NCBI GenBank assembly: GCA_030704615.1
Contig: CM060733.1
Span: forward strand, 46,128,001-46,192,000
From: Takakia lepidozioides
Taxonomy: Eukaryota > Plantae > Bryophyta
Direction: 5' to 3'
Length of the DNA stretch: 64,000 nucleotides
Each line of letters begins with the position of its first letter. Positions within the stretch are counted from its first letter, which is position 1. The position numbers were made by a program, and so were the translations under genes. The notes beneath the pieces are model-generated. The model was given only the letters and a program-made list of their open reading frames with translations, ran no database searches and had not been told where the DNA came from. This document shows, piece by piece, positions 327 through 62,798 of this stretch.

Positions 327-3300
327 TACAAGATAGCCGCATGCCAGATTTTGGTGACGGCTGATAAGGAGGCCAACATAGCCCATACTCGTAGTGTAAT
401 AGAGGCAGCTGCAGACAAAGGAGCTCAACTCATCCTCCTGCCAGTAAGCTTTCTAGATCCCTTCAGGATGTCTGGCAAAGATAGATCGAGTTTGATGATG
501 GAGAGGTCTTAGTTTTCAGTAAGCTGTCTGCTTTGGGTTCAATAGAAGGAGCCATCCGTGCAGACAATGCCTATTACCTCATCATTTAAGCTCTTGGCCT
601 TTCTGTGGATATTATAAAGTCCCTTTCTTGTTCCTTGTCTTTAATACATGAGGGTATGAATCTTATCCTGGGCCGATCTTTGTAGCACACTGTAGACAAT
701 GATGTCATGCACCCCTACTACTTCTACTAAGACAGAAGTGGCTGGTCTAGGACCAGAAATAAGAACATTGATACCCATAAATCTGTGCAGTTTAGGTTCC
801 TGTATTACTATGTGTGGAAAGACACAGTTCAGTGTGAACTTAAACCTTCTTGTCAATGTTTCCAGGAGATGTGGAACTGTCCTTTATCAAATGACAGCTT
901 TCCAATGTATGCGGAGGACATTGATGCTGGGTATGAAGCTTCTCCGTCTTCAGCAATGCTGGCTGAGGTGGCGCGCACAAAAGAAGTGACTATAATTGGA
1001 GGATCCATACCTGAGCGTAGTAACGGCCTCTTGTATAACACATGCTGTATTTTTGACAAAGACGGAGAGCTCAAGGCCAAGCACCGCAAGGTGTACACTT
1101 TCACTGAACAAGCAGGGGGGGCCAATGTTCCAAGAGCACTTTTCATACTTTCTGTCATTGTTAGATTGTTTGCAGAATTCCATGTGACAAAGTTAAGGAA
1201 CAGCAATGTCGCCATCTCCTGGGATATGCAATCTTTCTTGTTGTCTCCGCCATAAGGTAGAGACTAGGCATTCAACTGTCAAGGTCACTAATTATTCACC
1301 CTGTGAGTTGTCTGGTTGCCTAGCTCAGCATGGGCTGGGCTAGGTGAATCATCTCTTGAGAGGGCCAAGCCGTTGGGTGTGAAGGAGGGTGCTTCACTGA
1401 ATTAAATGGCATTTTGTGTTAAAGAGTGTCTTCTAACTTGATTGTTATCACCACATAAACAAACAGAGATGGAAATTTTTGCTAAGGCTGGAGTTGCATC
1501 TCTTTGTGGTCAGGTGCATCTGTTTGACATTGACATACCGGGGAAAATCACTTTTAAGGAGTCAGAGACGCTACACCCTGGAGAAGGCCTCACGGTTGTG
1601 GACACAGGTGGCCATATCAAAGCACCTAGCTGTTCTCTTTAATACATTGGGCACCAAAAGAGAGCCTAGCAAAGTCTAAACTCACTTTTGAGAGGTAGCC
1701 AAGATGAAAACATAGCCACATTTAGGGTAAGGTTTCCTGTCACATGTTTCCTTTCTGATGTGCCTGTTTGTATCACTGTCACACATGTACTTCCCTTTCC
1801 ATCCTTCTGTTTTCACTCAAGGGTGTTTTCTGAGTGCAGATGTTGGGCGCATAGCAGTAGGAATTTGCTATGATATCCGTTTTCCCGAAATGGCTATGCT
1901 CTATGCTGCCCGCGGTAAACTGGCCTCCTCCTGCATTCTAATCATATACTCAAATTGAATGATTTTTGGACCGGGTCAAGTTGAAAGAAAATTCTCTTTG
2001 ATAATGGCTTGAGCAAAAGACCTACATACTGGCATTAAACAGCTCTTACACACATCCAGATGCCAGGATTGACCTGTGTTGTTGTCGCAACAAACAGGGG
2101 CACACATTATATGCTATCCTGGGGCATTTAACATGACTACTGGCCCTCCCCACTGGGAGCTATTGCAAAAGGCCAGGTGCTCTCTCCCTATCCTTCTCTC
2201 TATTTCTTTCTAAATCTCGAGGCTGAGCCTAAAGCCCTGGTCCTGTTGAGGTCTAATTGCTGGGCAGCTTACACACAACAAATCGATGCTTTTGTGAAGG
2301 TCTTTCTAGAGGAATCTGGAAAGCCCGAACTAACTGCTTATGTCAAGGTAAGTCCTACTACTGGAGTGCCCCTCACAAATGTAGTGTCTGTTTTCTGCCC
2401 AAACTGGGCATGGGGTCTATGGCCACAAGGCTATTGAAAACAATTTCTCATGAGTACACTCTCTATCCCTGCCGTTCAGTGTCATATTCGCAAGGGGAAA
2501 GCTGAATGTTACATATGGTATGTTGTTGGTCATGAAATAGCTATTGCCATTTCATGTTGAAGTAGTCATCCAACTGGTTCTTCCAGGGGGTGGATATCCA
2601 CAATTCTACCACATTCGTGTCATAGCAAAGTATTACTTGTGTTACTGGTCTTTTTATTTCACTAGCATGGGGCTGCTGAGCCTCAGTGCTTCTAGCTATG
2701 GACTGACATGTCTTTTGCATGTTGGGGACTGGATATGAAACATTTCGGCAATTTCGCTGAGTGAGTCAGAGCTGTGGACAATCAGGTGAGATCATGACCA
2801 TTGGAGACAGAGTTCCAATGATAATGGTCTTCTCAAAGACCATTGATTTCTGGGTTTTGATCTTGCTTCTTGACCAGGTGCTAGTTGATGCTTTTGGATG
2901 TCAAGTAATAATTAAGACCTGTAGTTTGCACTGTATTTCGTAAAATGCATCAGCTTGGGACTCTTCCTGATTGCTCTACTGGGAGGTTCTTCATGCCAAC
3001 ATGACAACTGGTTCCCTCACTGACTGCACTGAAGCTAGATAGCACCATATACGCCCTTCACAACATATAACACATTCGTTGTTTACTCCTTCATTACCAC
3101 CTGAAGATGGAGAATCTGTATTGAAATGGGATGTGGTATGATGACAGATCTACGTAGTGACATGTTCACCAGCGAGGAATACTAGTGCAGGCTACATTGC
3201 CTGGGGACACTCTACCGTTGTCGGGCCTGTAAGTGTTCTCTCCTCTTCCTCTGTTTCTCTGCTCCCTATCCTAATGCAACATTAACCGCTTGTTGTGAAA

Positions 3301-6080
3301 CAGCTGCAACGTCATGTGACAGGTTCATGCATCTCTTGCTCACTTTAGAAGCTGCTTAGGCAGAGGGGTGGAAAGACCGAGTTTGGGCCAGTTTGAAATT
3401 CACCAACAGGTTTCTGGAATAGGCTTTTGGGTCTTTGTGGATCTAACACCAGTAGCAGCGAGTATGTGGATCAAAAGATGATCGATCTTCAAGTGCTATG
3501 GTTAAGTGGTCGAAAGAGTTAAGACTTCAAGTAAAATTTTCCTTTCAGGATGTCAATAGTATGACAGCATAATGGCTATATGTTCATAGATGTCATGGAG
3601 GTTTACAAAGAAGATTGCAGAGATGTGCACTAATGCTTTCTGAATTTCTGTGTGATCAACAGTTTGGTGAAATTCTGGCCACTACTGAACATGAGGAGGC
3701 AACCATTTTTGCAAATATTGATTACTCAGAAATTGACCAGAGAAGGTGCAGTTTTTTTCCCTGGCAGACTGAATACATCTTGAAATGCATCTTTAGTGCT
3801 TGTGACAATGTGACTTTAAAGGCAAGTTTCACAAGTACCTTACTTTTTGTGAGGTGGGTTCTCTTCTTTGTGATTTAGTGGCTCTCTAGCATGTGAAGAT
3901 TGCACCTGCTGAAGGCCATGAGAGAATGTACTCAAGACGATGTTTGCTGTAGCCCAAGGCCATGAGAGAGATTGTACTCATAAGACGTTGTTTGCCGTAG
4001 CCTTGTGGCCATTGACCCTGCGCCCAGTTTGAGCGGGAACAAAAGGGACAGAACCTACCTCTGTCAGGGGCTGACGTTGGTAGTAAGACTTACCTCCATA
4101 TAAAGAATTAATCCGGGTTTTCCAGATATCCTCTAGAAATCCCTTCACACAAGCATCAATCTGCTGTGTGTGATTTGCCCAAAAACTAGGCCTCAGGAGG
4201 GCCTGGGCTTTTGGCTCAGGCTCGAGACTTTCAAAGTTGGTAAACAGGGGTACAGGCACAATTCCCTTAATAGATTTGAAGAGAGCGTCTCTTTGGTGAG
4301 AGAACCCCGGACAGTGTATCAGAAAATGAATACTGTCTTCAGATTGCCCACACAACGGGCAATTGCACTCTCCCTTTCCTCTCTGCTTCTGTTTGCTGTT
4401 CAAAGGTAGGCTTCCTGCCCTGAGTTTAAATTTCAGTCTAGTGCCGAGAGTGGGTAGACCCTTGAGGTCATCCAAGATGTCCTCCCCCATGTCACAGACT
4501 GGAAACAAGTTCAGGGAAGTTTTCTGCCTAACTTCATTTTCATCAGACAATCTCATGGCAACAGACATGGCTTCGGACACTACAGCCTCTAAGTCAGATT
4601 TATCCAGCAGGGTCAAGACTTGCGGATCCAGGTCCAGGTCCTTGAGGATCTCTTCTACTCTCTTCTGCCAGGACTTAGCCTGTTTGACAGGGCGGTCCTG
4701 TTTCCAAGATATAGAGTCGATTAACTTAGGATATCTGGTGTTGGGCATATGTTGCAGCTGACCCCACCATCTGACCTTGAATTCATCTCGTCAGGAGCTT
4801 AAGGACGGAATGCCAAACTCACCCCGAACAGCCACATTGGCTGTTTTGGAGCATGCTGACATACACTCCTTAAGCACCCCACTTGAATGGATTCTAGAGA
4901 CTTAGCCTGGTTGGAGTTATCAACCCATATAGCAGATCCGTACTCCAAGGCAGGTCTAATAACGCGACAAAGCATGGTTTTCTTAACCTCAGAGTTGACC
5001 CCTCTGCAGTGGAAAAATTTAGTGAGCCCCAGAGCTTTGCCCTTGCCAGTTTGAACAACTTTCCGGATATGTGCATCCCAATTACAATTGGAGGAGAACT
5101 CAACGCCCAGGTAAGTGTAGGAAGGGAGGACCGGGATCTCTTGGCTACCCCACTGCCACTTAAGATCACTTCCTCCCTCTCCTCTGTCGTTGAATGCTAC
5201 CACTGCACATTTGCTGACATTAGCCTCTAGCCCCCAAAGATCAAAGTATCTCTTCGCGCAATCAATCAACTCCTGGAGATTGGTTGGAGTTTCCCTTTGC
5301 CTGCGAAGTCATCCGCAAACATAAGGGCTGGTATGGTGATATCACCCACCCTTAACCCAAATCCCTCACTTTCCACATCCTCGAGGAGTTGATTGATGAA
5401 AACATTGAAGAGCAGAGGGGAGAGAGTACATCCTTGAGCTACACCTTGGTCTATGTCAAAGAAGTTGGACTTCTGTCTGTTAACAGTGACACAGCTTTGG
5501 TGTGAGCATACAAGTTGCGGACAACTCTCCACATCTTTCCCTTGATCCCACAAGACCAGAGGCGGAACCATAGGCCATCTCTCCACACTGTGTCATAAGC
5601 CTTTTTGACATCCAGGAAAAAGACGTAAGTGGGTTTCCCTTCTTTTTTCCTTCCCTGGATAATCTGGCTTAGAGTGAAGATATGATCCACACAGCCCCTG
5701 TTTCGCCGAAAGCCAGCTTGGCCTTCGTGGAAACAACCTCTAGACTCCAGATCAACCTCGAGACGAGTACTTATAACTCTGCAGAATGTCTTGCCAACAG
5801 CATTGAGGAGCGTGATGCCACGGTAGTTCCCCGGTTCTTCTCTGTCACCCTTCTTGTATAGATTGACAATGACCCCTGTCGCCATCGAAAGGGGATCATT
5901 TCAGTCTTCCAGATAAGGTTAAAGAGGAGAACTAGGGCCTCTATCATGGGATCGCCACTGTGCTTGATAAGCTCGTTGACAATACCATCAGGTCCACCAG
6001 CTTTATATCCATCTAAATGCTCAATTGCTTCCACAATCTCAGAAGAACTAATGGGAGCGTTATAAGCCATTGAAATGCTT

Positions 6081-6129
<49 letters not shown>

Positions 6130-9100
6130 CTCATAAGACGTTGTTTGCCGTAGCCTTGTGGCCATTGACCCCGCGCCCAGTTTGAGCGGGAACAAAAGGG
6201 ACAGAACCTACCTCTGTCAGGGGCTGACGTTGGTAGTAAGACTTACCTCCATATAAAGAATTAATCCGGGTTTTCCAGATATCCTCTAGAAATCCCTTCA
6301 CACAAGCATCAATCTGCTGTGTGTGATTTGCCCAAAAACTAGGCCTCAGGAGGGCCTGGGCTTTTGGCTCAGGCTCGAGACTTTCAAAGATGGTAAACAG
6401 GGGTACAGGCACAATTCCCTTGAGAGAGAGATTGTACTCATAAGACGTTGTTTGCCGTAGCCTTGTGGCCATTGACCCCGCGCCCAGTTTGAGCGGGAAC
6501 AAAAGGGACAGAACCTACCTCTGTCAGGGGCTGACGTTGGTACTTTCAAAGATGGTAAACAGGGGTACAGGCACAATTCCCTTGAGAGAGAGATTGTACT
6601 CATAAGACGTTGTTTGCCGTAGCCTTGTGGCCATTGACCCCGCTCCCAGTTTGAGCGGGAACAAAAGGGACAGAACCTACCTCTGTCAGGGGCTGACGTT
6701 GGTAATCCAGATATCCTCTAGAAATCCCTTCACACAAGCATCAATCTGCTGTGTGTGATTTGCCCAAAAACTAGGCCTCAGGAGGGCCTGGGCTTTTGGC
6801 TCAGGCTCGAGACTTTCAAAGATGGTAAACAGGGGTACAGGCACAATTCCCTTGAGAGAGAGATTGTACTCATAAGACGTTGTTTGCCGTAGCCTTGTGG
6901 CCATTGACCCCGCGCCCAGTTTGAGCGGGAACAAAAGGGACAGAACCTACCTCTGTCAGGGGCTGACGTTGGTACTTTCAAAGATGGTAAACAGGGGTAC
7001 AGGCACAATTCCCTTGAGAGAGAGATTGTACTCATAAGACGTTGTTTGCCGTAGCCTTGTGGCCATTGACCCCGCTCCCAGTTTGAGCGGGAACAAAAGG
7101 GACAGAACCTACCTCTGTCAGGGGCTGACGTTGGTAATCCAGATATCCTCTAGAAATCCCTTCACACAAGCATCAATCTGCTGTGTGTGATTTGCCCAAA
7201 AACTAGGCCTCAGGAGGGCCTGGGCTTTTGGCTCAACCTCGAGACTTTCAAAGATGGTAAACAGGGGTACAGGCACAATTCCCTTGAGAGAGAGATTGTA
7301 CTCATAAGACGTTGTTTGCCGTAGCCTTGTGGCCATTGACCCCGCGCCCAGTTTGAGCGGGAACAAAAGGGACAGAACCTACCTCTGTCAGGGGCTGACG
7401 TTGGTAATAAGACTTACCTTCATCTAAAGAATTAATCCGGGTTTTCCAGATATCCTCTAGAAATCCCTTCACACAAGCATCAATCTGCTGTGTGTGATTT
7501 GCCCAAAAACTAGGCCTCAGGAGGGCCTGGGCTTTTGGCTCAGCCTCGAGACTTTCAAAGTTGGTAAACAGGGGTACAGGCACAATTCCCTTAATAGAGT
7601 TGAAGAGAGCGTCTCTTTGGTGAGAGAACCCCGGACAGTGTATCAGAAAATGAATACTGTCTTCAGATTGCCCACACAACGGGCAATTGCACTCTCCCTT
7701 TCCTCTCTGCTTCTGTTTGCTGTTCAAAGGTAGGCTTCCTGCCCTGAGTTTAAATTTCAGTCTAGTGCCGAGAGTGGGTAGACCCTTGAGGTCATCCAAG
7801 ATGTCCTCCCCCATGTCACTGACTGGAAACAAGTTCAGGGAGGTTTTCTGCCTAACTTCATTTTCATCAGACAATCTCATGGCAACAGACATGGCATCGG
7901 ACACTACAGCCTCTAAATCAGATTTATCCAGCACGGTCAAGACTTGCGGATCCAGGTCCAGGTCCTTGAGAATCTCTTCTACTCTCCTCTGCCAGGACTT
8001 AGCCTGTTTGACAGGGCGGTCCTGTGTCCAAGATATAGAGTCGATTAACTTAGGATATCTGGTGTTGGGCATATGTTGCAGCTGACCCCACCATCTGACC
8101 TTGAATTCATCTCGTCAGGAGCTTAAGGACGGAATGCCAAACTCACCCCGAACAGCCACATTGGCTGTTTTGGAGCATGCTGACATACACTCCTTAAGCA
8201 CCCCCACTTGAATGGATTCTAGAGACTTAGCCTGGTTGGAGTTATCAACCCATATAGCAGATCCGTACTCCAAGGCAGGTCTAATAACGCGACAAAGCAT
8301 GGTTTTCTTAACCTCAGAGTTGACCCCTCTGCAGTGGAAAAATTTAGTGAGCCCCAGAGCTTTGCCCTTGCCAGTTTGAACAACTTTCCGGATATGTGCA
8401 TCCCAATTACAATTGGAGGAGAACTCAACGCCCAGGTAAGTGTAGGAAGGGAGGACCGGGATCTCTTGGCTACCCCACTGCCACTTAAGATCGCTTCCTC
8501 CCTCTCCTCTGTCGTTGAATGCAACCACTGCACATTTGCTGACATTAGCCTCTAGCCCCCAAAGATCAAAGTATCTCTTCGTGCAATCAATCAACTCCTG
8601 GAGATTGGTTGGAGTCTCCCCTATGCCTGCGAAGTCATCCGCAAACATAAGGGCTGGTATGGTGGTATCACCCACCCTTAACCCAAATCCCTCACTTTCC
8701 ACATCCTCGAGGAGTTGATTGATGAAAACATTGAAGAGCAGAGGGGAGAGAGTACATCCTTGAGCTACACCTTGGTCTATGTCAAAGAAGTTGGACTTCT
8801 GTCCGTTAACAGTGACACAGCTTTGGTGTGAGCATACAAGTTGCGGACAACTCTCCACATCTTTCCCTTGATCCCACAAGACCAGAGGCGGAACCATAGG
8901 CCATCTCTCCACACTGTGTCATAAGCCTTTTTGACATCCAGGAAAAAGACGTAAGTGGGTTTCCCTTCTTTTTTCCTTCCCTGGATAATCTGGCTTAGAG
9001 TGAAGATATGATCCACACAGCCCCTGTTTCGCCGAAAGCCAGCTTGGCCTTCGTGGAAACAACCTCTAGACTCCAGATCAACCTCGAGACGAGTACTTAT

Positions 9101-12100
9101 AACTCTGCAGAATGTCTTGCCAACAGCATTGAGGAGCGTGATGCCACGGTAGTTCCCCGGTTCTTCTCTGTCACCCTTCTTGTATAGATTGACAATGACC
9201 CCCTGTCGCCATCGAAAGGGGATCATTTCAGTCTTCCAGATAAGGTTAAAGAGGAGAACTAGGGCCTCTATCATGGGATCGCCACCGTGCTTGATAAGCT
9301 CGTTGACAATACCATCAGGTCCACCAGCTTTATATCCATCTAAATGTTCAATTGCTTCCACAATCTCAGAAGAACTAATGGGAGCGTTATAAGCCATTGA
9401 AATATACTCCAGTTCATCAGGGCTGTTGTGAATCATAGGAACAGTTTTTCCAACTGTGTCCCTCCATTCAGCAGAAGACCCCTCACTGTTAGACCTAGAA
9501 GTTCTGCCAAGGATACTGTAGTTAGTTTCAAAGGTTTTGACAATGTCAACTGATGAAGTCACCACTGCACCTTTAGTAGTCTTCAGCGCTTGTACTTGCT
9601 GACCGTTTTTTGGCTTGTACAAACGTTGAAGGGCCAACCAGAATTTCTTGTCATTACCACCATGGTGGTTTGAGTTTATTTCACTGTATAACTTGTCCCA
9701 GTATAATTTCTTCTGAGACCTAACAAGCTGATTGATATCTTTACGGAGCTGGTAGTACCTCGCCCACAATTCTCTGTTGGTTTCCAAATTGCAGCACTCT
9801 TTATAGAGGGCTCATCTCTCAGCTATCTTGAGTTTAATCTCATTAGTCCACCAATTAACTGCTCTACCGCAGACAATTAGTTTCCTCCCAATGATCTTGT
9901 CAGCCACGGAGGAAACGAAACTCTCCCAAGAGTCCACTGCTCTTTCGACTTCATTTCTTGCGTTAACAGAGCGTGACTGAAGTTCTTGGAGCGATTGGAC
10001 AAAATGAGGGAGAGCCTCTTGCAAGGCTTGGACATACTCAGCCTTGACCTCTTCATCTTGGAATTTTGCTATGCGCCACTTCCGAATCGAACGCTTCACA
10101 GATCTCTTGGTGTTGGGAAAACACCTTTTGATCTCAGTCCAAACCAGGAAGTGGTCAGAGGTACCAATATCAGTTCTGTCGATCAACACACTGGCACTCT
10201 GGGGAAACAAACTTTTGTCCATTATGATATAATCCACAATGAAACGTTCCCCAGTTTGGGCTTTCTCACGAGTCCCTGCACTTGGTCTCCTTTTGACCTA
10301 TTATTCAAGGTCAAAAGCTGAAGTTCTTCCAGACAGTTTATTAACCGTCTACCATTGGAATTCAGCTCGTCCTCACCAAAAGGCCCAATGTTATCATCCT
10401 GATGGAGACCTTTGCCCACCCGGGCATTGAAGTCACCCAATAAGACCACCTGACCTTTGGCGAGGGACTTAGCACAGTCCAGCTTTACGTCTTCGAAGGC
10501 TTTGTCTGCGTCAGCACTACGGGTCCCCTCTGTGGGCATCTAAACACAACCCACAAAAGGTCCTTCGTATTCATGCGGCCCTTCAATTTCACTTTAGCCA
10601 AATACTGTGCTTGTACCGCAAATCCTTTTTGATAATTTCACAATTGTCACACAAGAAATCACGGACAAAGAAGCCAACCCCTTTTTGACCGCGTTTGGCA
10701 GAGGCTGCCTTGAGAGTACACATCCTACCTGCCCATTTATAACCATTGACATCTCCAACCAGTTTATCCGACGTTTCCCATGTTTCTTGCCCAGCACAGA
10801 TATGAATATCATTAGTCCGAAGGACTTGTCCCACTTCGAGTTGTTTCCTTTGGTTAGTAAGCCCTGAGAAGTTGAAAGTGGCCAGCCGCAAGCCAGCCCT
10901 TTGCATGTGAATTGTTTGTCGTCTAGGTAGCTTGTGATTGCTCCTGGACAGCCAACCGTTCTGCCCCATGTGTAGATTTTGCTCGTCTTGTGTAGACTTT
11001 GAGAATTGGTAAACCATTCAGGGTACCAAATCCTTCAGTTACATGACGCAGAGGCTCCGCACACTTAGGGGCATATTGTCCGTCAGACTGCTTGGGGACA
11101 ATTACCCCGTGTATAGGTTTTGCTCGTCTTGTGTAGACTTTGAGGATTGGTAAACCATTTAGAGTACCAAATCCTTCAGTTACGCGACGTTCAGGCTCTG
11201 CACACTTAGGGACAGATTGTCCATCTGACGGCTTGGGGACAATTACCCCGTGTATAGAATTTGTTTGTCTTGTGTAAACCTTGAGGATTGGTAAACCATT
11301 CAGAGTACCAAATCCTTCAGACTCAGGACGTTCAGGTTCTGTAGCTGTTTGGATTCAACCTCATCCAGAGCATCAAACCGATTAGAAACTTTCAAGTTGA
11401 AGTCCTTGCCCTTGGTTGTCTTCCTAGAGCGCCCCATTGAATCACCAATGTCTAAGACCGCTCTCCAGCCAGTCAAGGGACGAACTTCTTTGAGATTGAA
11501 TTGATGTGGGACTCTATTAGAAGCACTTTTGGACATTGCAACCTTCAACGTACCCCTGTTATCAAGTCTTGAGATGGAACCATTAGCCAAGAAATCCAAG
11601 CCTAAGCTAGAGCATGTAGTTTTAAAGGACACATCGTCCATCCTGGGATTCACCCCAAAAACTACACATGAAGCCCTAGATTTGGCATAAGTAACCAATT
11701 CCCAGGAATCACCCTGGGGAGTGTTGATGTTGATAGGAGCTAAAATATTGATTGATCTCGCAGGCTATAAGTTTAAGCACAGGAACCAACCCGAGCCCAA
11801 GTGCCGAGTATGCTATACAGAGCATACGACTGCCCAATTTGGCGGAGGGGCTGCCCCCAAGCGGTAGGGGTCCGCTTGTTACCATTCAGAGATCACACTC
11901 CAGGGAGTTGCAGGGAATGGCCCGTGTAGGCATATTCTAAAGAGGGAAAGGCCCCAAGCTTTCCAACTAAATCCAATGCACTACCTTACCTGGAGCAAAG
12001 CGCTTTAGGTCGAAACAAACAAGGACACGAGGTCACAAGGCCGGCATTTAGTCACAGAGAGAGAGAGCTACCATGGACCTGGGTGTACCGGTAGCCTGCA

Positions 12101-27699: not shown

Positions 27700-29421
27700 T
27701 CAACTTAATTCCTTGAAGTCCATTGTGTGGGAAGGCTCCAGTGGAGGGGGACTTGCAGCAGAATACACCACCCTCCTGTCTCTACTTATGAGCCAATTGA
27801 GTCTAAATTTCCTTGCCTTGGGAGTGCCAGCGATTTTACTGCTCTCTCCTGCACTCCCAAAACTGCTGTCAGTTTCGCATGGCTGCCATCCCAAGACGGC
27901 ATCCCTTGAGACTGATTCAAAAGCAGTTGTTTCTGATAAAGACCTCCGGTAGCGACTCGCACTAGTTTTGCCTTCGGGTAGCCGAAGCGAGGAGCACCGC
28001 TTGGAGAGATTGCTCTCTCTCTCTCGTGCTGGCTGATCTGCCAGGAAGTGTATAAGCTTCAGCTCTTCTTCTGCTGGTTGATTTAACTCCGACCCCTTGG
28101 CCTCCAACAGAGCATCGGCAGCTCCTTGTGCTTCAGCTTGTTTCTCCATATTCATAACTATCCATTGCTCCGTAGAGTCTGGTGGTTCCTGACTTACACT
28201 AGGTGAGTAACGATACGCATACTGATCATAAATAGCAGGAGAGATTGTGCTGCTCCCAGGACTCGGCGTCAACAGCTCTCGCACTCTTGACAGAGTCTGG
28301 GGCGTGTAGAGGCCGCGGCTGGCCCAAAAGAGATCATCATTTGCAGGTGTTCCCCCTGCAGTCCCTAGCTCTGGTATGCTATCTGAAAGGGCACTTCGGT
28401 GGGTTGGCCTCGAAGGTGCCCAGTCCCGAGGGCGCCCAGGAAATGGAGTAGGGGCGATCATCAGCTCCAGGTTTGAGGGATCGACAATGTACTCGTAGGA
28501 ACCCATTGAGTACGACCGCCCTCCCCTGCGTGCGCCATGAGAACCACTGCTAACTCTTCTATTGTCCGTTTTCACCTTCCCCAGCTCCACTGTCAATATC
28601 CTCTCCGAGCCATAAGCATCGGTCACACGTACTGTGGGACCCAATGTCATGGGATCTTCGTCTTCCTCCACTATTTCACTCTCGGATTCGACTTCATCCA
28701 CCTCGCAGATTCTGAAGCTTTCATGGCGTTGTGCTTCCAGTACTGGTTCCAACAAGGAGAGCCCCTGAGCGTAACCACCCTCAGCCACCTCTACTTCCCA
28801 TCCGCCCTCTCGCCTGCCAGACTCAACGGCTGACGTAGGATCTGGCAAGAGGCTTCTCCTGCAGAGAGGGCAAGTCGAGTTGGAGAGCAACCAAGTGTCG
28901 ATACAGTCCAAGTGAAATGCATGCTTGCACTTTGGGAGCAGCCTGAGGCGATCGTCCTCCCCGAACTCATTCAGACACACTGCACAGTCTGCACTGTCTT
29001 TCAAACCCCGGATAGACCCATACGAGAACACCGGTAGTGTGTCTATGAATGCTTGATCTACACCTGCGTCATGTAAGTGGAATAAGTGCTGCAGCTGCCC
29101 ATGAAGAGCACTCACTGGGCCAGGCAGGGGCGGACTTTGCCTGGGCCGCCGTGCCAAACATCGGGCAAGAAGGTGGAGAAATCCCGACAGAATGAAAACA
29201 ACACTGAGAATAATAACAATCACGGCCACGCTCGGATTAATGTGCGATGTGCTTGAGCTTAACGTGTCCAACCGACGAATGTGTCCAAGGGGCAAATCGG
29301 AGGGGGGCCCTGGTGGTTGATACGTTGAGTGCAGTGGTTGTAGTCGCGAATAGGAATTTCGAGCTAAGGGCGGTGCTGGATGACTTTGAACTCTGCGAGC
29401 CCAAACATCTGGCGTGGACAT
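27700..29421 (-). CDS. ATL-family RING-H2 E3 ubiquitin ligase (ATL46/47/13-like), intronless, 573 aa
   Basis: TM segment, QLQHLFHLHDAGVDQAFIDTLPVF (GLD motif), RING-H2 CAVC..CKHAFHLDCIDTWL..CPLC, RSYSMGSYEY motif. Confidence 0.93.
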   Translation of the reverse strand: MSTPDVWARRVQSHPAPPLARNSYSRLQPLHSTYQPPGPPSDLPLGHIRRLDTLSSSTSHINPSVAVIVIILSVVFILSGFLHLLARCLARRPRQSPPLPGPVSALHGQLQHLFHLHDAGVDQAFIDTLPVFSYGSIRGLKDSADCAVCLNEFGEDDRLRLLPKCKHAFHLDCIDTWLLSNSTCPLCRRSLLPDPTSAVESGRREGGWEVEVAEGGYAQGLSLLEPVLEAQRHESFRICEVDEVESESEIVEEDEDPMTLGPTVRVTDAYGSERILTVELGKVKTDNRRVSSGSHGARRGGRSYSMGSYEYIVDPSNLELMIAPTPFPGRPRDWAPSRPTHRSALSDSIPELGTAGGTPANDDLFWASRGLYTPQTLSRVRELLTPSPGSSTISPAIYDQYAYRYSPSVSQEPPDSTEQWIVMNMEKQAEAQGAADALLEAKGSELNQPAEEELKLIHFLADQPARERESNLSKRCSSLRLPEGKTSASRYRRSLSETTAFESVSRDAVLGWQPCETDSSFGSAGESSKIAGTPKARKFRLNWLISRDRRVVYSAASPPPLEPSHTMDFKELS

Positions 29422-31632: not shown

Positions 31633-33641
31633 CTAAAGATGTAAAGTGAAGTGAGGCTTTTGAGAAATTTCTGCACCTGCAACATCTTCAACGATGGATG
31701 AAAGGGCCCGTATCAATGAGTTGAGACCGCCCAAGAAATTTTCATCAACTGCATCCCGCTCATGGAGTACATGGGCAAAATCCACAAGTCTGACCGACAC
31801 AGATCTTGAAGAATGTGGACCAGCTGCTGGAGTTGGAAGCTCACCTTCATATATAATTAACACAGATGCAGAGTAGAAGTGGTAAAATGTTTGTGACTCA
31901 AACCTGTCAAAGGACCAACTTTGAAGGTGTAAGATTGTGCATGACCTCAATCATTTTCTCCCAAAGTTGATGAGACCAAGGCAAAACATTGCCAATGCAA
32001 CTACCCCCAAGTAGTGCCCTAGATAGTGATAGATGAAGTACATTCTCACACACAAGATTGTGAGGTAATCAAGCTGGACACCAGAGAAGCCAGAGCAGTG
32101 TAGCTGCCTTCTGTTGTCTTCTACTGGTTCCAATTTAACAATTATTTAAATTGTGAAGAGGGCTTTCGAGCCCAGTGCTTTTCTTATAGGTCTTCGAACC
32201 CCAAGGAGCCCACTTTGGTGAGGGAATGTCCAGAGTAGAAGAACAAAGAAATTCCACATCAAGATACCATGCACATACCAAGCTTTGAGCTGTTGGAGCT
32301 GGGCAATGGCTCCCTGAGGCCCAGCATAGACAGCAGTTGCCGAAGTGACATCGGGACTTGTCTCATCTGATGGATTTGATGAAACAAAACGTTTAAGGGC
32401 AAGAGGCACAAGCTCGGTGGTCAGATATTTACACCACTTGCGGTCAGCTTTCCATGCTGTCCCAGTTGCCAGCTCATATACCTGCACAGCAAACAGCTAG
32501 CCTTACTTCAAGCCCACCACTACATTTCTTCAATACTTCACGACCTTTGATCTATTTCCATGTACCAGATAGTCATGCCAGCTGCAAATTTGGGACATCG
32601 AACCGGTCAACAAAGCAAGATGTACTCTTTCACATTAGCATATGAAACTCAGCTCTATGGTGTGAAATAGGTTGCACTTTGTAGGAGGAAGTTGCACACT
32701 CAAGTACTTAATATGTCTCTAACGGTCCCAGGTGTGCAGGTGGCTGTTGATCTAAGTTCAGAGGCACAAATGTGATTCAAGGAAAACCTCAAAGGAAGGC
32801 ACAATAAGAACCTGCATTCCAGATAACCGGAACCCCAAGGCTCCTGATGTCGTTTCAACATCTTTCTTTCTAAGCCCCACACAAATTCAACAAAAAACAT
32901 GTCAAACGTTTTTCCTCCAAGATGGGTCAGTACAATTATCTTGCCTTTAAAAATGAAAGTATAAGCAGCCCCTCTCCCATTAAAAGCTCCCGTACTACCA
33001 AGACAACCAGCATTCCCAAGCCACTCTTCTTCTCCTCCTCTGTTGACTCACTTGAGACAATGTACCGTGGATGCTGAACGTCACAGGACCCTTAAATTCC
33101 AAGCTAAGAGGATCAAGTAACATCATTAACAGCACCTCCATGGAAGCAGCAATCAAATAGCCCCCCCAACCTGCTATGCAGAGAGATGGAGAGAGAACAT
33201 AATCATTAGACGTTGGTTGCCGTAGCCTGGTGGCCATAGACCCCATGCCCAGTTTGGTCGGAGCAAGAGGGAACAAATAGTGGGTGCGGCACTGGGACGG
33301 TCACCCATCCCAGTACTATTCTGGCCCAACGGCACTTTAACTTCAGAGTCCTGATGGGATCTGGTGTAGTAGCCTTGGTATGACTGCCACAAGATGGAGA
33401 GAATGTACAGATAAGATGTAGTTTGCCATAGCCTTGTGGCCATAGACCCCACACCGAGCTTGGGCAGAACAATATACTACCTTTGTGAGGGGTTCACTCA
33501 AGCAGTGGGACTTAAACTCAGCAAATAGATTGGGCTTTCCAGAGTTCCTCTAGAAAGCCCTCCACACAAGCATCAATCTGATGTGTGAGATCTACCCAGC
33601 AATTTGCCCCCAACAGGGCCAGGGTTCTAGGCTCAGCCAAG

Positions 33642-33672
<31 letters not shown>

Positions 33673-47890: not shown

Positions 47891-47963
47891 TCCGTAATAG
47901 TCTAGATGGTTAGGATACCTGGCTTTCACCCAGGCGACCCGGGTTCGAGTCCCGGTTACGGAA
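47891..47963 (+). tRNA. tRNA-Glu(UUC)
   Basis: Acceptor stem TCCGTAA/TTACGGA, anticodon arm CCTGG-CTTTCAC-CCAGG, T arm CCGGG-TTCGAGT-CCCGG, followed by a T6 Pol III terminator. Confidence 0.96.
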
Positions 47964-52464: not shown

Positions 52465-54618
52465 CTAGCACGTGGAGGACACAGTTGAAGATGACAAGAC
52501 ATGGTCCTCTGTTATGATGTCATGCAAAGTAACTGGGGGACTAGTGGTGAAGTATGTGGGCACTGGTTTTGAGCTGGGAACTGGGGGCATGGGGGCATCC
52601 CCGCCCAGAATCTGCATAACCTGCCTCATGGTTGGCCTTGCAGTGGGATCCGGATGTGAACAAAGAAGGCCCACATGAAATACCTTCATCAGTTCATCAC
52701 CTCTGGATTGCTGCCCTCTCAGTCTCGGGTCCACAGCGTCCTCTAGTCTTCCTCTCTTGTGAAAACCCCACACCCAATCGACCAGAACAGTGTCCTCGGG
52801 GCAAACCCCTCTCTCGATGGGGCGTCGCCCAGTGACTATCTCCAGAGCAACTGCCCCGAAGCTAAAGACATCAGATTTCTCCGTCAAAGCTCCCATGTGG
52901 GTGCTCTCAGGGGCCATATAACCAAACGTTCCAACAATTGCAGTAGTTTCTGGGGATTTGTTGTGTTCGCTCAATCTAGCCAGGCCGAAGTCCCCGAGGC
53001 GCGCGTTAAATTGGGCATCTAGCATCACATTGCTGGCTTTCACGTCTCTGTGTAAGACTCTCTGCTCCCACTCTTCATGTATGTACGCCAGAGCTGCTGC
53101 CACACCGGTCACAATTTTGTACCTTTGATCCCAGCCCAACGCACACTCCTTTGGATTTTCAAACAGATGTTTGTCCAGGCTCCCATTTGGCATATAGTCA
53201 TACACCAGCAGTAGCTGGCCTTTGCCATGGCACCATCCCTGCAAGGGTACCAGGTTCCGATGGCGCAGCCGGCTGATGATCGACACCTCCACCAAAAACT
53301 CTCTCTTGCCCTTTGAGTCACCTGAAATGCATTTGACAGCAACCACTGACCCGTCATCTGGAAGCACGCCCTTGTACACACTCCCTGAACCCCCAATCCC
53401 AAGCAACCTTTGTGAGCTGAAGTCCTTGGTAGCACTGCTCAGCTCCTTGTAGGTGAACTTGCGGGGTCCGCAGATGAGGCTGTCAGATCCGGGGTCGTCA
53501 TCGTTGAGATCCAAAGTTGCATTTTCGAGTCTCCGCCTTCTTAGAAAAATGCAGACGATAAATAAAGAGGCTAGAAGCAGCAATCCTCCCATACCTATGC
53601 AAAACCCAGTAACCAGGGCCTCAAATTGGCACTTTAAACCTCTGCCCATGCACCTGGCAGATCGCAAACCCGCCGTAGGAACAGTGGAAGCAAGTGTAGG
53701 GGTTGGAGCAAAAGAGAGTGGGGAAATTCCAGTGCCAGACCCTGGCGGAGGGGCTGATTCAGCTGGAAGCCCACTAACAGCGAATCCCCAGGAGTGGACA
53801 GTGTGAATCTCAACCAAAGAGCCAGTGGAAGCGGAGAAACCCACATACATGTACTCATTGAAAATAGCCGACAGGTTAACAGTGGCATTAAGGAGCGCAG
53901 ACTCTGGTTTGATGAAACAATTCTGGGCCAGTCGAACCTCGAGGAACTGCGTGCTGGCGTCGTAGTCGATCCAGGCAGTAAGGTTTGAACCCTCTGCGAG
54001 ATTCACATTTGCACCTGCCAACGCATCCACAGATTTGATCGAGACCATGCTATCGATGTTTACACCCACGTGATTTGCATTGATGTCACTGAATCTCGTG
54101 TTCTGGAAGGTGTCAAACTCCACTGCGAATGTGCGGGGGCGGGGATTCTGCAGCATGCTATCATTCAACACCCCCAGCCAGCCCCCATAGCTGCCAATCG
54201 AAGTACTATCCGGAACTATGATGAAGGCCAGCCCATCTCCAGACCCATTCCCCGCACTGTCAGCTTGTATGGAAAAACCGAAAGTGGTCTGGAAAGAAGC
54301 GGTGGTGTTCGATGCAGGGTCCCGCATCCGCACCCGGTCTTTGTACACAGCTCTTCCTACACTGAAAGTCACAGGCTCCACAGTAGAGTCGAGTGTAAGC
54401 TCAATATCTCCTTGTCTGATGAACGACGATCCAAGCAAGCACAAATCGTCCTGAGTAAAATCGTGGTACATCAAAAACGAGACATTTTGAGCCAGAGCAT
54501 ACGGAATTAGCAGGTGCGAGACAGACAGAAACACTAGCTGAATAATCCACCCCAATTCCAAACAGGTGGCTCTGCCTTTCGCTCTACATCTCGGCCTACA
54601 TAAATTCGCTCCTTCCAT
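52465..54618 (-). CDS. LecRK: L-type (legume) lectin receptor-like kinase, intronless, 717 aa
   Basis: Signal peptide; lectin motifs GDGLAF, AVEFDT, NHVG, YVGFSASTG; TM segment; kinase HRDVKASN and DFG. Confidence 0.96.
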   Translation of the reverse strand: MEGANLCRPRCRAKGRATCLELGWIIQLVFLSVSHLLIPYALAQNVSFLMYHDFTQDDLCLLGSSFIRQGDIELTLDSTVEPVTFSVGRAVYKDRVRMRDPASNTTASFQTTFGFSIQADSAGNGSGDGLAFIIVPDSTSIGSYGGWLGVLNDSMLQNPRPRTFAVEFDTFQNTRFSDINANHVGVNIDSMVSIKSVDALAGANVNLAEGSNLTAWIDYDASTQFLEVRLAQNCFIKPESALLNATVNLSAIFNEYMYVGFSASTGSLVEIHTVHSWGFAVSGLPAESAPPPGSGTGISPLSFAPTPTLASTVPTAGLRSARCMGRGLKCQFEALVTGFCIGMGGLLLLASLFIVCIFLRRRRLENATLDLNDDDPGSDSLICGPRKFTYKELSSATKDFSSQRLLGIGGSGSVYKGVLPDDGSVVAVKCISGDSKGKREFLVEVSIISRLRHRNLVPLQGWCHGKGQLLLVYDYMPNGSLDKHLFENPKECALGWDQRYKIVTGVAAALAYIHEEWEQRVLHRDVKASNVMLDAQFNARLGDFGLARLSEHNKSPETTAIVGTFGYMAPESTHMGALTEKSDVFSFGAVALEIVTGRRPIERGVCPEDTVLVDWVWGFHKRGRLEDAVDPRLRGQQSRGDELMKVFHVGLLCSHPDPTARPTMRQVMQILGGDAPMPPVPSSKPVPTYFTTSPPVTLHDIITEDHVLSSSTVSSTC

Positions 54619-59842: not shown

Positions 59843-62374
59843 GTCCATGTAGAATCAATCACCAGCCTAGAAGCTTTTCGGTGGCTCTCGAGAGCTTGTA
59901 AGCTGCAACAGCGTCCAGTGTTCATCTTGGATCCCTTTTCTCTTCACACCGATCGACGAATACCGCTAGCAACAGCAACGAAACATGACCCCCGCGGCCC
60001 ATCTGCTTGGCTGGTAAACAAGTTGATAAACATGAAAGAGAGAAAAGAGCTCACCAATAATTGAACACATCAACATCTCAGGCTTGAATAGAATTCTGTT
60101 GAATCCCACTAATTTCTCCAGACGAGACTCTGCTTCCAATTCAACCCAGTCAATTTTGCTTGCAGACCACGCCTATCAGTGATCATTCACCTCCAAGAGT
60201 TTCTTCCACAAAATGAAGAGGTACTTCCAACACAGCTTGTTGCACAATAGGACTTTCCAGCTTAACTTTCTTGTTTGCATTTACAAACATTTGTTCAGTT
60301 TTGCAGTAAGTTGCAAAATTGAAAGGAGTTGTGCAAAAGATTAGAAGGGGCAGGTTGGATCTGTGACTAGGAATACAAGTGCCTTCAACACTATCTCTTG
60401 CCTGTGAAGTATATAGACCTCCATCTTCCATAGATTTCATTAGCTTAAACAAGCCATCTCTATTGATGGTATGTTTCATCCCTGATGCCATGTGAAAAAA
60501 CAAATATGGACTCACCAATGAATCTATGGCAACTTGGTTGGTTGCCCTGGAACGCAATAAGCTGAAAGGTCACTCTTGACAGTCAATCTTGCATCCTCAT
60601 AACTTTGAAATATCTGCAACTCTGATCGGGGTAGAACAAGTTGAAACTCTTTGCCATTACCAAGCCACCTACATTGAAACTTGAATCTCTTCTCTCTCGC
60701 GTACAAAATCGCCATGGCGAACCTTGTATTTCCTCGCGGATCCTATCAATCTCCCTCAACCACACCTAACTCACACCTGTAAAAGTCAAGTAGGTGTTTA
60801 TGTGTGTTCCCTCAACCAAACTTATGAAGCGCATCATGCAAATCTTCTTGAAAGCAACCAAACCTGCGAAATGGACTCGGGAAATTTTACGATATCCCAT
60901 GAGCACTTCTTCCAAGTTCGCATCCCCCAAAGTTGGACTCGTATCCCTCGAAGGTGGACAGTATGACACAAACTCGACGTCATTTTCTCTGCCATGGTAT
61001 AACAACATCTTGGAAATGTTGCCCCTAATCAACAAGCACACAATATACCTCAACACTTTGATAATCTTGGAGACAAACATCCAGTCCAGAAAACAAATGC
61101 ATCAAGTTTTGAAGAAACTTCGTGGGAATGAATACATAAAAAAAAACATAAGATCTCCCATTAAATGAGCTTGGTGAAATTCTGCAAGTTTTTCTTGATG
61201 TAACTTTATTTTAACAAATTTTGGACTATTGGCCGCTTAAATCTGGATCATACGTCTCAAGCCTTCGCTCGCTCTTTCTCATTTTTTACCTTGTTGGCAA
61301 TTGTAGAGTGTTCTTCTCTACCGGCTGTCAAAGATGTTCCTTACACTTCATTTGCGGCAGCGCAGTCACGTCCACGCCCAGATATAGACACAGATGGTCA
61401 CTCTCTGGGCTTGCCCAAGATTATGATCATCTTTTACAAGACCCTCCGCTGACATCTCACGACCCTCTGCTGACGTTTCACACTATATGGACTTTTTTAG
61501 GATGACATGCATTGTGGTGATGCGGCACTGTCCTTTAGTTTGTACCCATATGACTCCAAGTCTAAAGTCCATTCCAAATTCAAGGTCAAAGCCTAGGTTT
61601 GCATCTGTCATTTCTGCCGATCCAAAAGAGATTGATGCATTGCACGAGTTCATTTAATTGAAAGAACAACAAGTGGAGCGACTCCAACATTTTACATCAA
61701 ACTTGGATGCAATTGAGGAGAACATGAAATTGGTAGATAACTTAGAGTATTTTCCAGCAGCAAATCGTACCAATGTTGCCAAAATGACATGGTTTTGGCC
61801 TAATAACGAACAAGTAAATCGAGATCACATGGATGGGTCAACCGATGATATGGAAGAAATGACTACATTTTTTTTTTTCTACCCAATGTTGAACCTCGTC
61901 AATATTTTGGTACAAAACGATTAATCCAAGAGAAGATCACGCAAAGATGTTTCACCTCCGGCCCAAGTGAATCTATTTTCAGAATTTGTCCTGATTTTGT
62001 TGGTATGCTTTCAAGTAGTTTGGGAAAGAGAGGGAAGTTCATACCGCGCAAACACCTTTACTTCGTCTTCTTGAGAAGGATGGTTTGTGATCCAAAGCGA
62101 GACTTCTTCATTCACCAAGCCACTATGAGTTTCAACGAAGTCAACGCACTTCTACAGCGGGATACAAGCCCATAGAAAGCATTCACTTGACACTCCAAAA
62201 TCTGTGTTTTCCTTGACTACAACTTGTAATGGAATGACTGGTCAAGTCCAGTGTCTCTCAATGTATGTCGTCTAACATCTTTGCTATGCGTGGGTCAATG
62301 CATTTATCGCATTGGTATTCTGTTTTCATTAGCAAGCACAAGAAACTACCTTCAGATAGACAGATGATCAAATC

Positions 62375-62606
62375 AACCTCGTGTTAACACGAGGTTTACT
62401 TGGAGTTTTCCAAATCCCCCTTGTGCCGACACAAGGTTGATTTTAGTTCTAAGAAAAGAACATCGTGTTAACACGAGGTTGATATGAAGTTCTCCGAATC
62501 AACCTCGTGTTGACACGATGTTGATTTTAGTTCCAGGAAAACAACCTCGTGTTAACACAACGTTCATTTCAGTTCTAGGAAATGAAGCTCCTGTTAACAG
62601 AAGGTT
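62375..62606. repeat. Six 22-bp palindromes (AACCTCGTGTTAACACGAGGTT) at exact 42-bp spacing
   Basis: Copies start at 62375, 62417, 62459, 62501, 62543 and 62585. Confidence 0.88.
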
Positions 62607-62798
62607 GAACTCCAGGAAAGCCCGAAACCTCGAAATCATGGGACATGCTTGTTTCGTTCCTCACTCAGGTAAGCACATGTATCTTAACTGTTGTGTGAAT
62701 AATTTTGCTTTGGCAACTTGTTCTAGCTTGTCGATGGGATTGATTTCCTGTTGGATCAAGATTGGGCTTGTGACACTGTCTCCTGTTTTTGGCTGTAG

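What the first reader, a model, noticed from the sequence alone, without database searches (positions are those of the whole stretch)
33184..33402. 5S rRNA head fused to the local LINE's tail with a TSD: candidate plant SINE3 and its partner LINE in one window
Seen: on the minus strand a nearly complete 5S rRNA (33390-33281; A-box region and C-box GGATGGGTGACC retained, ~9 nt deleted) is joined directly to ~86 nt that align with the last ~90 nt of the LINE at 7286-12055 (CAAACTGGGC..GGGGTC.ATGGCCAC.AGGCTACGGCAA.CAACGTCT.ATGA.TA..TCTCTC). The unit is flanked by an 11-bp direct repeat AGATGGAGAGA and is inserted exactly at the tail of an older copy of the same LINE. Known: a 5S head with internal Pol III promoter plus a LINE-derived tail defines SINE3, described mainly in animals; plant SINEs are typically tRNA-derived, and 5S capture in plants is known from Cassandra TRIMs, which are LTR elements. 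Inference: this is either a 5S-derived SINE family mobilised by this LINE or a one-off template-switch chimera like the U6-L1 chimeras.
Basis: partly seen in the sequence, partly recalled or inferred. Interest (0 to 1): 0.88.

Follow-up and report, generated by a model that had tools for sequence, protein, structure and literature searches.

The report
5S rRNA fused to LINE tail
A 197-base retrocopy in a moss-like plant genome joins a whole, decayed 5S rRNA to the 3' end of a local LINE inside one target-site duplication; this is the build of a 5S-derived SINE, a kind not yet reported in plants, but I could not test whether it belongs to a multi-copy family.

Summary
On the minus strand, Rfam RF00001 matches 33391-33275 over the whole 5S model (52.5 bits against a gathering score of 38). 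It is followed directly by about 80 nt (33274-33195) that are 83% identical to the 3' end of the 4.8-kb LINE at 7286-12067.

The 197-nt unit is flanked by an exact 11-bp direct repeat, 33402-33392 and 33194-33184. That 11-mer occurs nowhere else in the window. The unit sits in the TC-rich tail of an older, 5'-truncated copy of the same LINE (33638-33392).

The host is a land plant. Its nearest named relative is Sphagnum, at 67-68% identity in a lectin receptor kinase.

The unit is therefore a LINE-mediated retrocopy of a 5S plus LINE-tail RNA. I could not test whether it belongs to a self-propagating SINE3-type family or is an independent template-switch chimera.

First readers of this scan noted the same architecture at 10 other places in this genome. 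I did not check those notes; they are leads only. My odds are about 0.5 for a SINE family, about 0.35 for an independent chimera, and the rest for other readings. A 2024 review states that no 5S-derived SINE is known in plants.

The parts
33646..33672 (-). (CT)13 microsatellite just upstream (in the element's sense) of the older LINE fragment. It is the target of that earlier insertion.
   Evidence: TRF reports (AG)13.5 on the + strand; the sense-strand read is.
33392..33638 (-). Older, 5'-truncated copy of the local LINE (last ~250 nt, LINE positions 4523-4782). Its degenerate TC-rich end was the target of the 5S-tail unit.
   Evidence: blastn gives 72% identity over 256 nt, E 6e-35.
33392..33402 (-). 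Left copy of the 11-bp target-site duplication TCTCTCCATCT.
   Evidence: It is exact and one of only two occurrences in the window on both strands.
33275..33391 (-). 5S rRNA-derived head. It is full length (model positions 1-120) and begins at the base next to the TSD. It is degenerate, with 11 non-canonical pairs.
   Evidence: RF00001, 52.5 bits, E 4.4e-08.
33331..33344 (-). Box A-like stretch of the 5S internal promoter, with one inserted base.
   Evidence: cmscan alignment; coordinates.
33299..33318 (-). Box C region, including GGATGGGTGACC. It matches the conserved positions of the 5S model.
   Evidence: cmscan alignment; coordinates.
33195..33274 (-). LINE-derived tail. It carries the conserved core GGGGTC.ATGGCCAC.AGGCTA.GGCAA and both predicted 3' hairpins of the LINE, and ends in a short TC run.
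   Evidence: blastn E 5e-17 to 3e-20 against six LINE 3' ends; alignment A1; RNAalifold; 83% identity to the young LINE.
33184..33194 (-). Right copy of the 11-bp target-site duplication.
7286..12067 (-). Full-length (4.78 kb) copy of the candidate partner LINE. It has an APE-type endonuclease and an RT, carries frameshifts, and is flanked by (CT)n/(TC)n.
   Evidence: Pfam RVT_1 and Exo_endo_phos_2. Nearest solved structure is human L1 ORF2p, E 1e-18. Flanks are read.
3964..7292 (-). Further copies of the same LINE's 3' end: a 2.1-kb copy and a head-to-tail stack of 49- to 314-nt 3' fragments, partly tandemly duplicated (period 432).
   Evidence: blastn; TRF.
2206..2467 (+). Older 273-nt 5'-truncated copy of the LINE 3' end on the other strand.
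   Evidence: blastn gives 76% identity, E 4e-50.

Best explanation
The 197-nt unit at 33391-33195 (minus strand) is a retroposed copy of an RNA made of a whole 5S rRNA sequence followed by the last ~80-100 nt of the 3' UTR of the local L1-like, (TC)n-targeting LINE. The LINE's endonuclease and reverse transcriptase inserted it by target-primed reverse transcription into the TC-rich end of an older truncated LINE copy, which produced the 11-bp duplication. This part is shown by the anatomy.

I infer that this copy is a dead member of a 5S-headed SINE (SINE3-type) lineage. The founder would have arisen when the LINE reverse transcriptase switched template from LINE RNA to a 5S rRNA. The 5S internal Pol III promoter (box A, IE, box C) would then drive read-through transcripts, since the 5S T-run is reduced to TTT and there is no T4 in the unit. 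The LINE tail in those transcripts would be recognised by the LINE protein. Membership of a family is inferred, not shown.
For: Shown:
- The 5S match covers the full model and starts at the base next to the TSD.
- The tail is homologous to six LINE 3' ends and keeps the conserved core and both predicted hairpins.
- The 11-bp repeat is exact, unique in the window, and carries a CCAT interruption that other LINE tails lack.
- The same LINE has (CT)n/(TC)n at its ends and stacks into its own tails.
- There is no run of 4 or more T inside the unit; the next one downstream is at 32985.

Suggestive for a master-copy origin:
- The head is strongly degenerate, with 11 of its pairs non-canonical and 52.5 bits.
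- The tail is about 17% diverged from the LINE.
- Yet the two 11-bp TSD copies are identical. If all that divergence had arisen after insertion, a perfect 11/11 would be expected only about 2-4% of the time (my arithmetic, 0.83-0.86 to the power 22). Part of the divergence therefore probably predates the insertion.

Lead only, untested: 10 other first-reader notes in the same genome describe a 5S head plus LINE tail. Seven of them are 156-245 letters long, against 219 for this finding with its TSDs.
Against: - Only one copy lies in the 64-kb window, so no shared junction, shared head indels or independent TSDs could be checked.
- The partner LINE is abundant here, and many of its copies are cut to 45-314 nt. 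This is the setting in which independent template-switch chimeras with short LINE parts would arise. Kojima's argument against independent chimeras, the absence of a LINE sharing the tail (PMC4494074), does not apply here.
- The TSD-versus-divergence argument is weak. It rests on 11 bp without CpG, while some of the divergence is CpG decay or lies on the LINE's own lineage.
- This copy has a base inserted in box A, and transcription was not tested.
- From my own knowledge, plant 5S genes also depend on upstream elements that a retrocopy would not carry.
Confidence: 0.5

Rival explanations
1. It is an independent template-switch chimera, the analogue of the U6/L1 and 5S/L1 chimeras. During one insertion of a LINE copy, the reverse transcriptase stopped about 80-100 nt from the 3' end, jumped to a 5S rRNA and copied it to its 5' end. 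The product was never transcribed and copied again. Other 5S-LINE fusions in the genome, if real, would be separate events.
For: - The layout (full-length sense small RNA, 3' LINE part, one TSD) is also that of the U6/L1 chimeras (10.1101/2025.02.02.635956; PMC4494074).
- Severely 5'-truncated copies of this LINE (45-314 nt) are common in the window, so early termination is frequent.
- A U-rich stretch of the LINE RNA lies at or near the junction and could pair with the A-run copied from it. That would suit a jump to the U-tail of 5S RNA, but this depends on which alignment is used.
- There is only one copy in the window.
Against: - The head is far from a functional 5S (11 broken pairs) while the TSD is perfect. 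That fits poorly with a copy made from functional 5S rRNA unless the TSD escaped mutation by chance (about 2-4%).
- In mammals, 5S/L1 chimeras are mostly truncated and antisense, unlike this full-length sense head.
- Ten similar notes in one ~325-Mb genome, if real, would imply a rate far above that seen for L1. This point is untested.
Confidence: 0.35
2. It is a single tripartite event. One reverse transcription copied a LINE 3' end, jumped to 5S rRNA, then jumped to the 3' end of a second LINE RNA and copied about 250 nt. On this reading 33638-33184 is one insertion and the 11-bp repeat is merely the shared end of two LINE tails.
For: - The two tails are about equally diverged from the young LINE (81% and 83%) and are 73% identical to each other, which is compatible with equal age.
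- The whole block lies between (CT)13 and a TC-rich end.
- From my own knowledge, double template jumps have been described for fungal LINEs.
Against: - The 11-mer contains a CCAT interruption that the other four LINE tails lack. Both RNAs would have had to come from the same odd source copy.
- The adjacent 70 nt are only 73% identical, which gives P(11/11) of about 0.03.
- Double jumps are rarer than single ones.
Confidence: 0.07
3. It is a DNA-level product: a piece of 5S rDNA (an orphon) with a LINE inserted downstream, moved or duplicated as DNA, or a Cassandra-type LTR fragment.
For: Other notes of the scan report 5S rDNA associated with DNA transposons elsewhere in this genome (untested). 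Cassandra TRIMs carry 5S sequences in plants (PMC10886601).
Against: - The 5S starts exactly at model position 1 next to the TSD and ends at its T-run, with no 5S spacer sequence.
- There is no second 5S and no LTR-like repeat of the region anywhere in the window.
- The TSD and the LINE tail are TPRT hallmarks.
Confidence: 0.03

Closest known systems
SINE3 (5S rRNA-derived SINEs: zebrafish SINE3, fruit-bat MEG, springhare Ped-1, lepidopteran HaSE3, python SINE-1_Pmo, coelacanth CoeSINE5)
   Same: A 5S-derived head with box A/IE/C at the 5' end, a tail taken from the 3' end of a co-resident LINE, short length (197 nt), a TSD, and no coding capacity (family descriptions in PMC10886601, PMC5786205, PMC10946416).
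   Different: - The host is a land plant. Known SINE3 families are from vertebrates and insects, with 5S-related SINEs also reported in Aspergillus (PMC5063351, abstract only). The 2024 review states that none is known in plants.
- There is no body between head and tail.
- The partner is an L1-like LINE that targets (TC)n, not a CR1- or RTE-type LINE.
- Multi-copy family status is not shown here.
U6/L1 and 5S/L1 chimeric retrocopies (template switching during L1 reverse transcription)
   Same: A small Pol III RNA joined 5' to the 3' part of a LINE within one TSD, made by the LINE's own machinery.
   Different: Those chimeras are one-off and do not propagate. Mammalian 5S/L1 chimeras are mostly truncated and antisense. 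Here the 5S is full length, in sense, and much more degenerate than its perfect TSD would suggest.
Cassandra TRIMs (5S promoter inside LTRs; the known route of 5S capture in plants)
   Same: A 5S-derived sequence with Pol III boxes inside a plant retroelement.
   Different: There are no LTRs and no second 5S copy nearby. The 3' part is a LINE tail and the insertion shows TPRT hallmarks. It has been speculated that Cassandra began with a SINE3 inserting into an LTR. An element like this one would be that kind of precursor.
Kibi/Koshi-type Tx1-group LINEs that insert into (TC)n or (TTC)n microsatellites
   Same: The partner LINE has APE and RT domains, is closest to L1 ORF2p among solved structures, ends in (TC)n and lies in (CT)n/(TC)n (description in PMC4494074).
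   Different: Kibi and Koshi are from teleost fishes. Clade membership was not tested here. The nearest named relatives of this RT are brown-alga (Ectocarpus) LINEs, at 55-63% identity over part of the query.

Membership tests
SINE3 (5S-derived SINE) | 5' head derived from 5S rRNA | tested here: met
   RF00001, model positions 1-120, 52.5 bits against a gathering score of 38.
SINE3 (5S-derived SINE) | Internal Pol III promoter (box A, IE, box C) retained and functional | tested here: inconclusive
   The box C region matches the conserved model positions. Box A has one inserted base. There is no T4 in the unit.
SINE3 (5S-derived SINE) | 3' tail shared with a partner LINE in the same genome | tested here: met
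   82-83% identity to the LINE 3' end, E 5e-17 to 3e-20, with the conserved core kept.
SINE3 (5S-derived SINE) | Insertion by TPRT, with a target-site duplication | tested here: met
   An exact 11-bp repeat that is unique in the window.
SINE3 (5S-derived SINE) | Multi-copy family descended from master copies: same junction, shared diagnostic changes, each copy with its own TSD | not testable with these tools
Metagenome, genome and viral scans were blank or chance hits. Ten similar first-reader notes exist but are unchecked.
Template-switch chimeric retrocopy (U6/L1 type) | Small RNA 5' of a LINE 3' part within one TSD | tested here: met
Template-switch chimeric retrocopy (U6/L1 type) | Each copy is a unique event that is not propagated, and the small-RNA part equals the functional gene at the time of insertion | tested here: inconclusive
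   The head has 11 broken pairs while the TSD is perfect, which leans against this feature but only weakly. The species' functional 5S gene was not available.
Cassandra TRIM | 5S sequence inside each of two LTRs flanking a short internal region with PBS and PPT | tested here: not met
   There is no second 5S and no repeat of the region in the window.
Tx1-group microsatellite-specific LINE (partner element) | APE plus RT, insertion into (TC)n, and phylogenetic placement in Tx1 | tested here: inconclusive
   The domains and the (TC)n flanks are met. The RT is nearest to L1 ORF2p in the PDB. No clade phylogeny was done.

The most novel reading that the evidence does not exclude
This is one copy of a true SINE3 family in a bryophyte. 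It would be the first 5S rRNA-derived SINE in plants. It would be mobilised by an L1/Tx1-like LINE that targets (TC)n microsatellites and stacks into its own tails. It would also be a living example of the kind of element proposed as the source of the 5S promoter in Cassandra LTRs.
Probability: 0.5. Interest if true: 0.75.

Novelty: new member of a known kind. Interest (0 to 1): 0.6.

Why it matters
Plant SINEs described so far are tRNA-derived. [quoted passage not shown] A verified 5S-headed SINE with its partner LINE in a moss-like genome would have three consequences:
- It would extend SINE3 to a new kingdom.
- It would show another independent birth of a SINE by fusion of 5S RNA to a LINE tail.
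- It would make testable the proposal that Cassandra began with a SINE3 insertion into an LTR.

If the copies turn out to be independent chimeras, the result would instead document frequent template switching to 5S rRNA by a plant LINE. I found no report of that in the papers searched.

Tried and rejected
- **Sequencing runs.** The tool did not say the stretch was human-like. Afterwards I ran four pattern scans with short motifs from the stretch, and I state that here for the record.
- **Collection scans.** The metagenome scan for box C plus the tail core found nothing, and the scan for the tail core alone also found nothing. The genome-contig scan gave 2 bacterial matches, about the number expected by chance. 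The viral-contig scan found nothing.
- **Own findings.** A look-up of the scan's findings by sequence was blank.
- **Distant LINE relatives.** Two relatives fetched from ENA metagenome contigs (L003, L004; 44-45% amino-acid identity) carry no 5S and no alignable tail.
- **Other copies in the window.** None was found, even with Rfam at E<=5.
- **Readings rejected.** The Cassandra and DNA-level orphon readings are rejected: there is no second 5S, no LTR and no spacer. A tripartite double-jump reading is kept at low odds.
- **Junction microhomology.** I considered a T-run microhomology at the junction but do not rely on it, because it depends on which of two alignments is used.

Full report
**What is there**

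All of the following reads on the minus strand.
- A (CT)13 microsatellite lies at 33672-33646 (TRF; sequence).
- It is followed by the last ~250 nt of a LINE at 33638-33392. This stretch is 72% identical to positions 4523-4778 of the 4.78-kb LINE at 7286-12067, E 6e-35.
- That fragment ends in a degenerate TC run. Directly after it, Rfam's 5S model (RF00001) matches 33391-33275 over the whole model (positions 1-120), at 52.5 bits against a gathering score of 38, E 4.4e-08. It is the only 5S match in the window, even with permissive thresholds.
- The 5S is followed without a spacer by about 80 nt (33274-33195) that match the 3' end of the same LINE: 82% to positions 4696-4780, E 5e-17. There are similar matches to five other LINE 3' ends in the window.
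- In a multiple alignment the tail keeps the invariant core GGGGTC.ATGGCCAC.AGGCTA.GGCAA. It also keeps the two small hairpins that RNAalifold predicts for the LINE tails. These hairpins are invariant, so there is no covariation evidence for them.
- The 197-nt unit is bounded by TCTCTCCATCT at 33402-33392 and 33194-33184. This 11-mer occurs only at these two places on either strand of the window. Its CCAT interruption is absent from the pure (TC)n ends of the other LINE tails.

- The 5S ends at 33275 rather than 33281.
- Infernal shows 4 deleted model positions and 1 inserted base rather than one 9-nt deletion.
- The junction is uncertain by 10-20 nt, because the first tail bases can be aligned to the LINE either with a 12-nt insertion or without a gap.

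**The host**

The window encodes an intact L-type lectin receptor kinase and fragments of a filament-like plant protein. The kinase's best named hits are three Sphagnum species at 67-68% identity; ferns, lycophytes and seed plants are at or below 55%. The exact proteins are not in the 15-billion-protein collection. The genome is therefore a land plant, probably a moss lineage distant from Sphagnum. I did not determine the species.

**The partner LINE**

- The 4.78-kb element has Exo_endo_phos_2 and RVT_1 matches spread over several frames, so this copy is broken.
- Among solved structures its RT is closest to human L1 ORF2p, E 1e-18.
- Its nearest named relatives in the protein search are LINEs of the brown alga Ectocarpus, at 55-63% identity over part of the query, not plant L1 or RTE elements.
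- The full-length copy has (CT)n at its 5' flank and ends in (TC)5.
- Shorter 3' fragments of 45-314 nt are stacked head to tail on its tail, and the stack is partly tandemly duplicated with a period of 432.

This fits a LINE that nicks (GA)n/(TC)n and primes on it. It is the behaviour described for the fish Tx1-group elements Kibi and Koshi (PMC4494074). I did not test clade membership.

**How the unit was made**

Four features are the hallmarks of an RNA copied and inserted by the LINE's target-primed reverse transcription:
- a 5S that begins at model position 1 right next to the TSD;
- a 5S that ends in its T-run;
- a LINE 3' end behind it;
- one TSD around both, in the LINE's preferred TC-rich target.

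I consider this part shown.

The RNA itself must have arisen, at some time, by fusion of 5S RNA to a LINE 3' end. The accepted route is a template switch of the reverse transcriptase from LINE RNA to a small RNA. The open question is whether that switch happened in this very insertion (a one-off chimera) or once in an ancestor that was then transcribed from the 5S internal promoter and copied many times (a SINE).

**Evidence bearing on that question**

*For a SINE lineage*
- The unit has the complete SINE build, and box C is intact.
- The 5S terminator is reduced to TTT. There is no run of 4 or more T in the 197 nt, so Pol III could read into the tail. The chance of no T4 in 197 nt is about one in three, so this is weak.
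- The head is far from a working 5S: 22 positions flagged, which is 11 non-canonical pairs.
- The tail is about 17% diverged from the LINE, yet the two TSD copies are identical. If all that divergence were post-insertion decay, a perfect 11/11 would be expected in only about 2-4% of cases (my arithmetic). Some divergence therefore probably existed in the source RNA. That fits a master copy better than functional 5S rRNA.
- This argument is weakened by three things: the TSD is short, it lacks CpG, and part of the tail divergence lies on the LINE's own lineage.

*For an independent chimera*
- The LINE is abundant here and very often truncated to 45-314 nt, which is the situation that produces chimeras with short LINE parts.
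- Kojima's main argument for a family over a sum of chimeras, that no LINE shares the tail, does not apply.
- Only one copy lies in the window.

*A third reading*

A double jump could have made 33638-33184 in one event. This reading is disfavoured. It needs two LINE RNAs with the same odd CCAT-bearing end, while their neighbouring 70 nt are only 73% identical.

**Leads from the scan**

By words and by place, the scan's notebook lists 10 other first-reader notes in this same genome titled as a 5S head fused to a LINE tail. Their lengths are 156, 167, 196, 207, 208, 226, 245, 345, 408 and 448 letters; the present finding is 219. None is marked as checked, and I could not see their sequences. They raise my prior that 5S-LINE fusions recur in this genome, and the cluster near 200 letters hints at a fixed unit length. 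They are not evidence.

**What I could not do**

- Two metagenome scans (box C plus tail core; tail core alone) found nothing.
- The bacterial/archaeal genome scan gave two chance matches, and the viral scan gave none.
- Two distant relatives of the LINE on ENA metagenome contigs (L003, L004) have no 5S.

**Comparison with what is known**

In build, the unit is a simple SINE3: 5S head plus LINE tail, with no body. Known SINE3 families come from fish, reptiles, mammals and insects, and 5S-related SINEs are also reported in Aspergillus (PMC5063351, abstract). [quoted passage not shown] My searches of the held library for later reports found none.

The unit is not a Cassandra element, because there are no LTRs and no second 5S. 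It differs from mammalian 5S/L1 chimeras, which are mostly truncated and antisense.

**Verdict**

The anatomy is real and well supported (about 0.9). Membership of a propagating SINE3-type family is plausible (about 0.5) but untested. An independent chimera is the main rival (about 0.35). One genome-wide search would settle it.

Noticed in passing
window 7286-12067 (-): The LINE's RT has no plant L1 or RTE among its named best hits. The nearest named relatives are Ectocarpus (brown alga) LINEs at 55-63% identity over part of the query, and many hits are unnamed ENA contigs. This could be an old clade that is rare in plants, or a horizontal arrival.
   Followed up: partly
window 6274-7406: The LINE's 3' end is present as a 432-bp tandem repeat (2.6 copies, 99% identical) with a nested 162-bp period. 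It is built from stacked 49-, 121- and 314-nt 3' fragments that share the same 5' truncation points. This is either repeated insertion into its own (TC)n tail followed by unequal crossing-over, or a short non-autonomous derivative.
   Followed up: partly
L003:11930-11945: About 400 nt after the RT ORF of a distant LINE relative (45% amino-acid identity, ENA metagenome contig) lies GGTCTATGGCCA. This is a 12-nt exact match to the invariant core of this LINE's tail. The 3' recognition motif may be conserved across the clade, or the match may be chance.
   Followed up: no
window 52465-54618 (-): An intact, intronless 717-aa L-type lectin receptor kinase (Lectin_legB plus Pkinase), 67-68% identical to Sphagnum proteins. 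It was the best clue to the host lineage.
   Followed up: partly
window 47891-47963 (+): A tRNA-Glu (TTC) gene, 65.7 bits, apparently intact and standing alone.
   Followed up: no
window 62370-62608: A tandem array of 42/84-bp units, each an inverted repeat (AACCTCGTGT...ACACGAGGTT). It gives weak miRNA-precursor-like hits on both strands, and is probably a terminal or subterminal repeat array of a DNA transposon.
   Followed up: no
window 27700-29421 (-): A 573-aa uninterrupted ORF with a RING-H2 finger (zf-RING_2, E 5e-15). The exact sequence is not in the protein collection.
   Followed up: no
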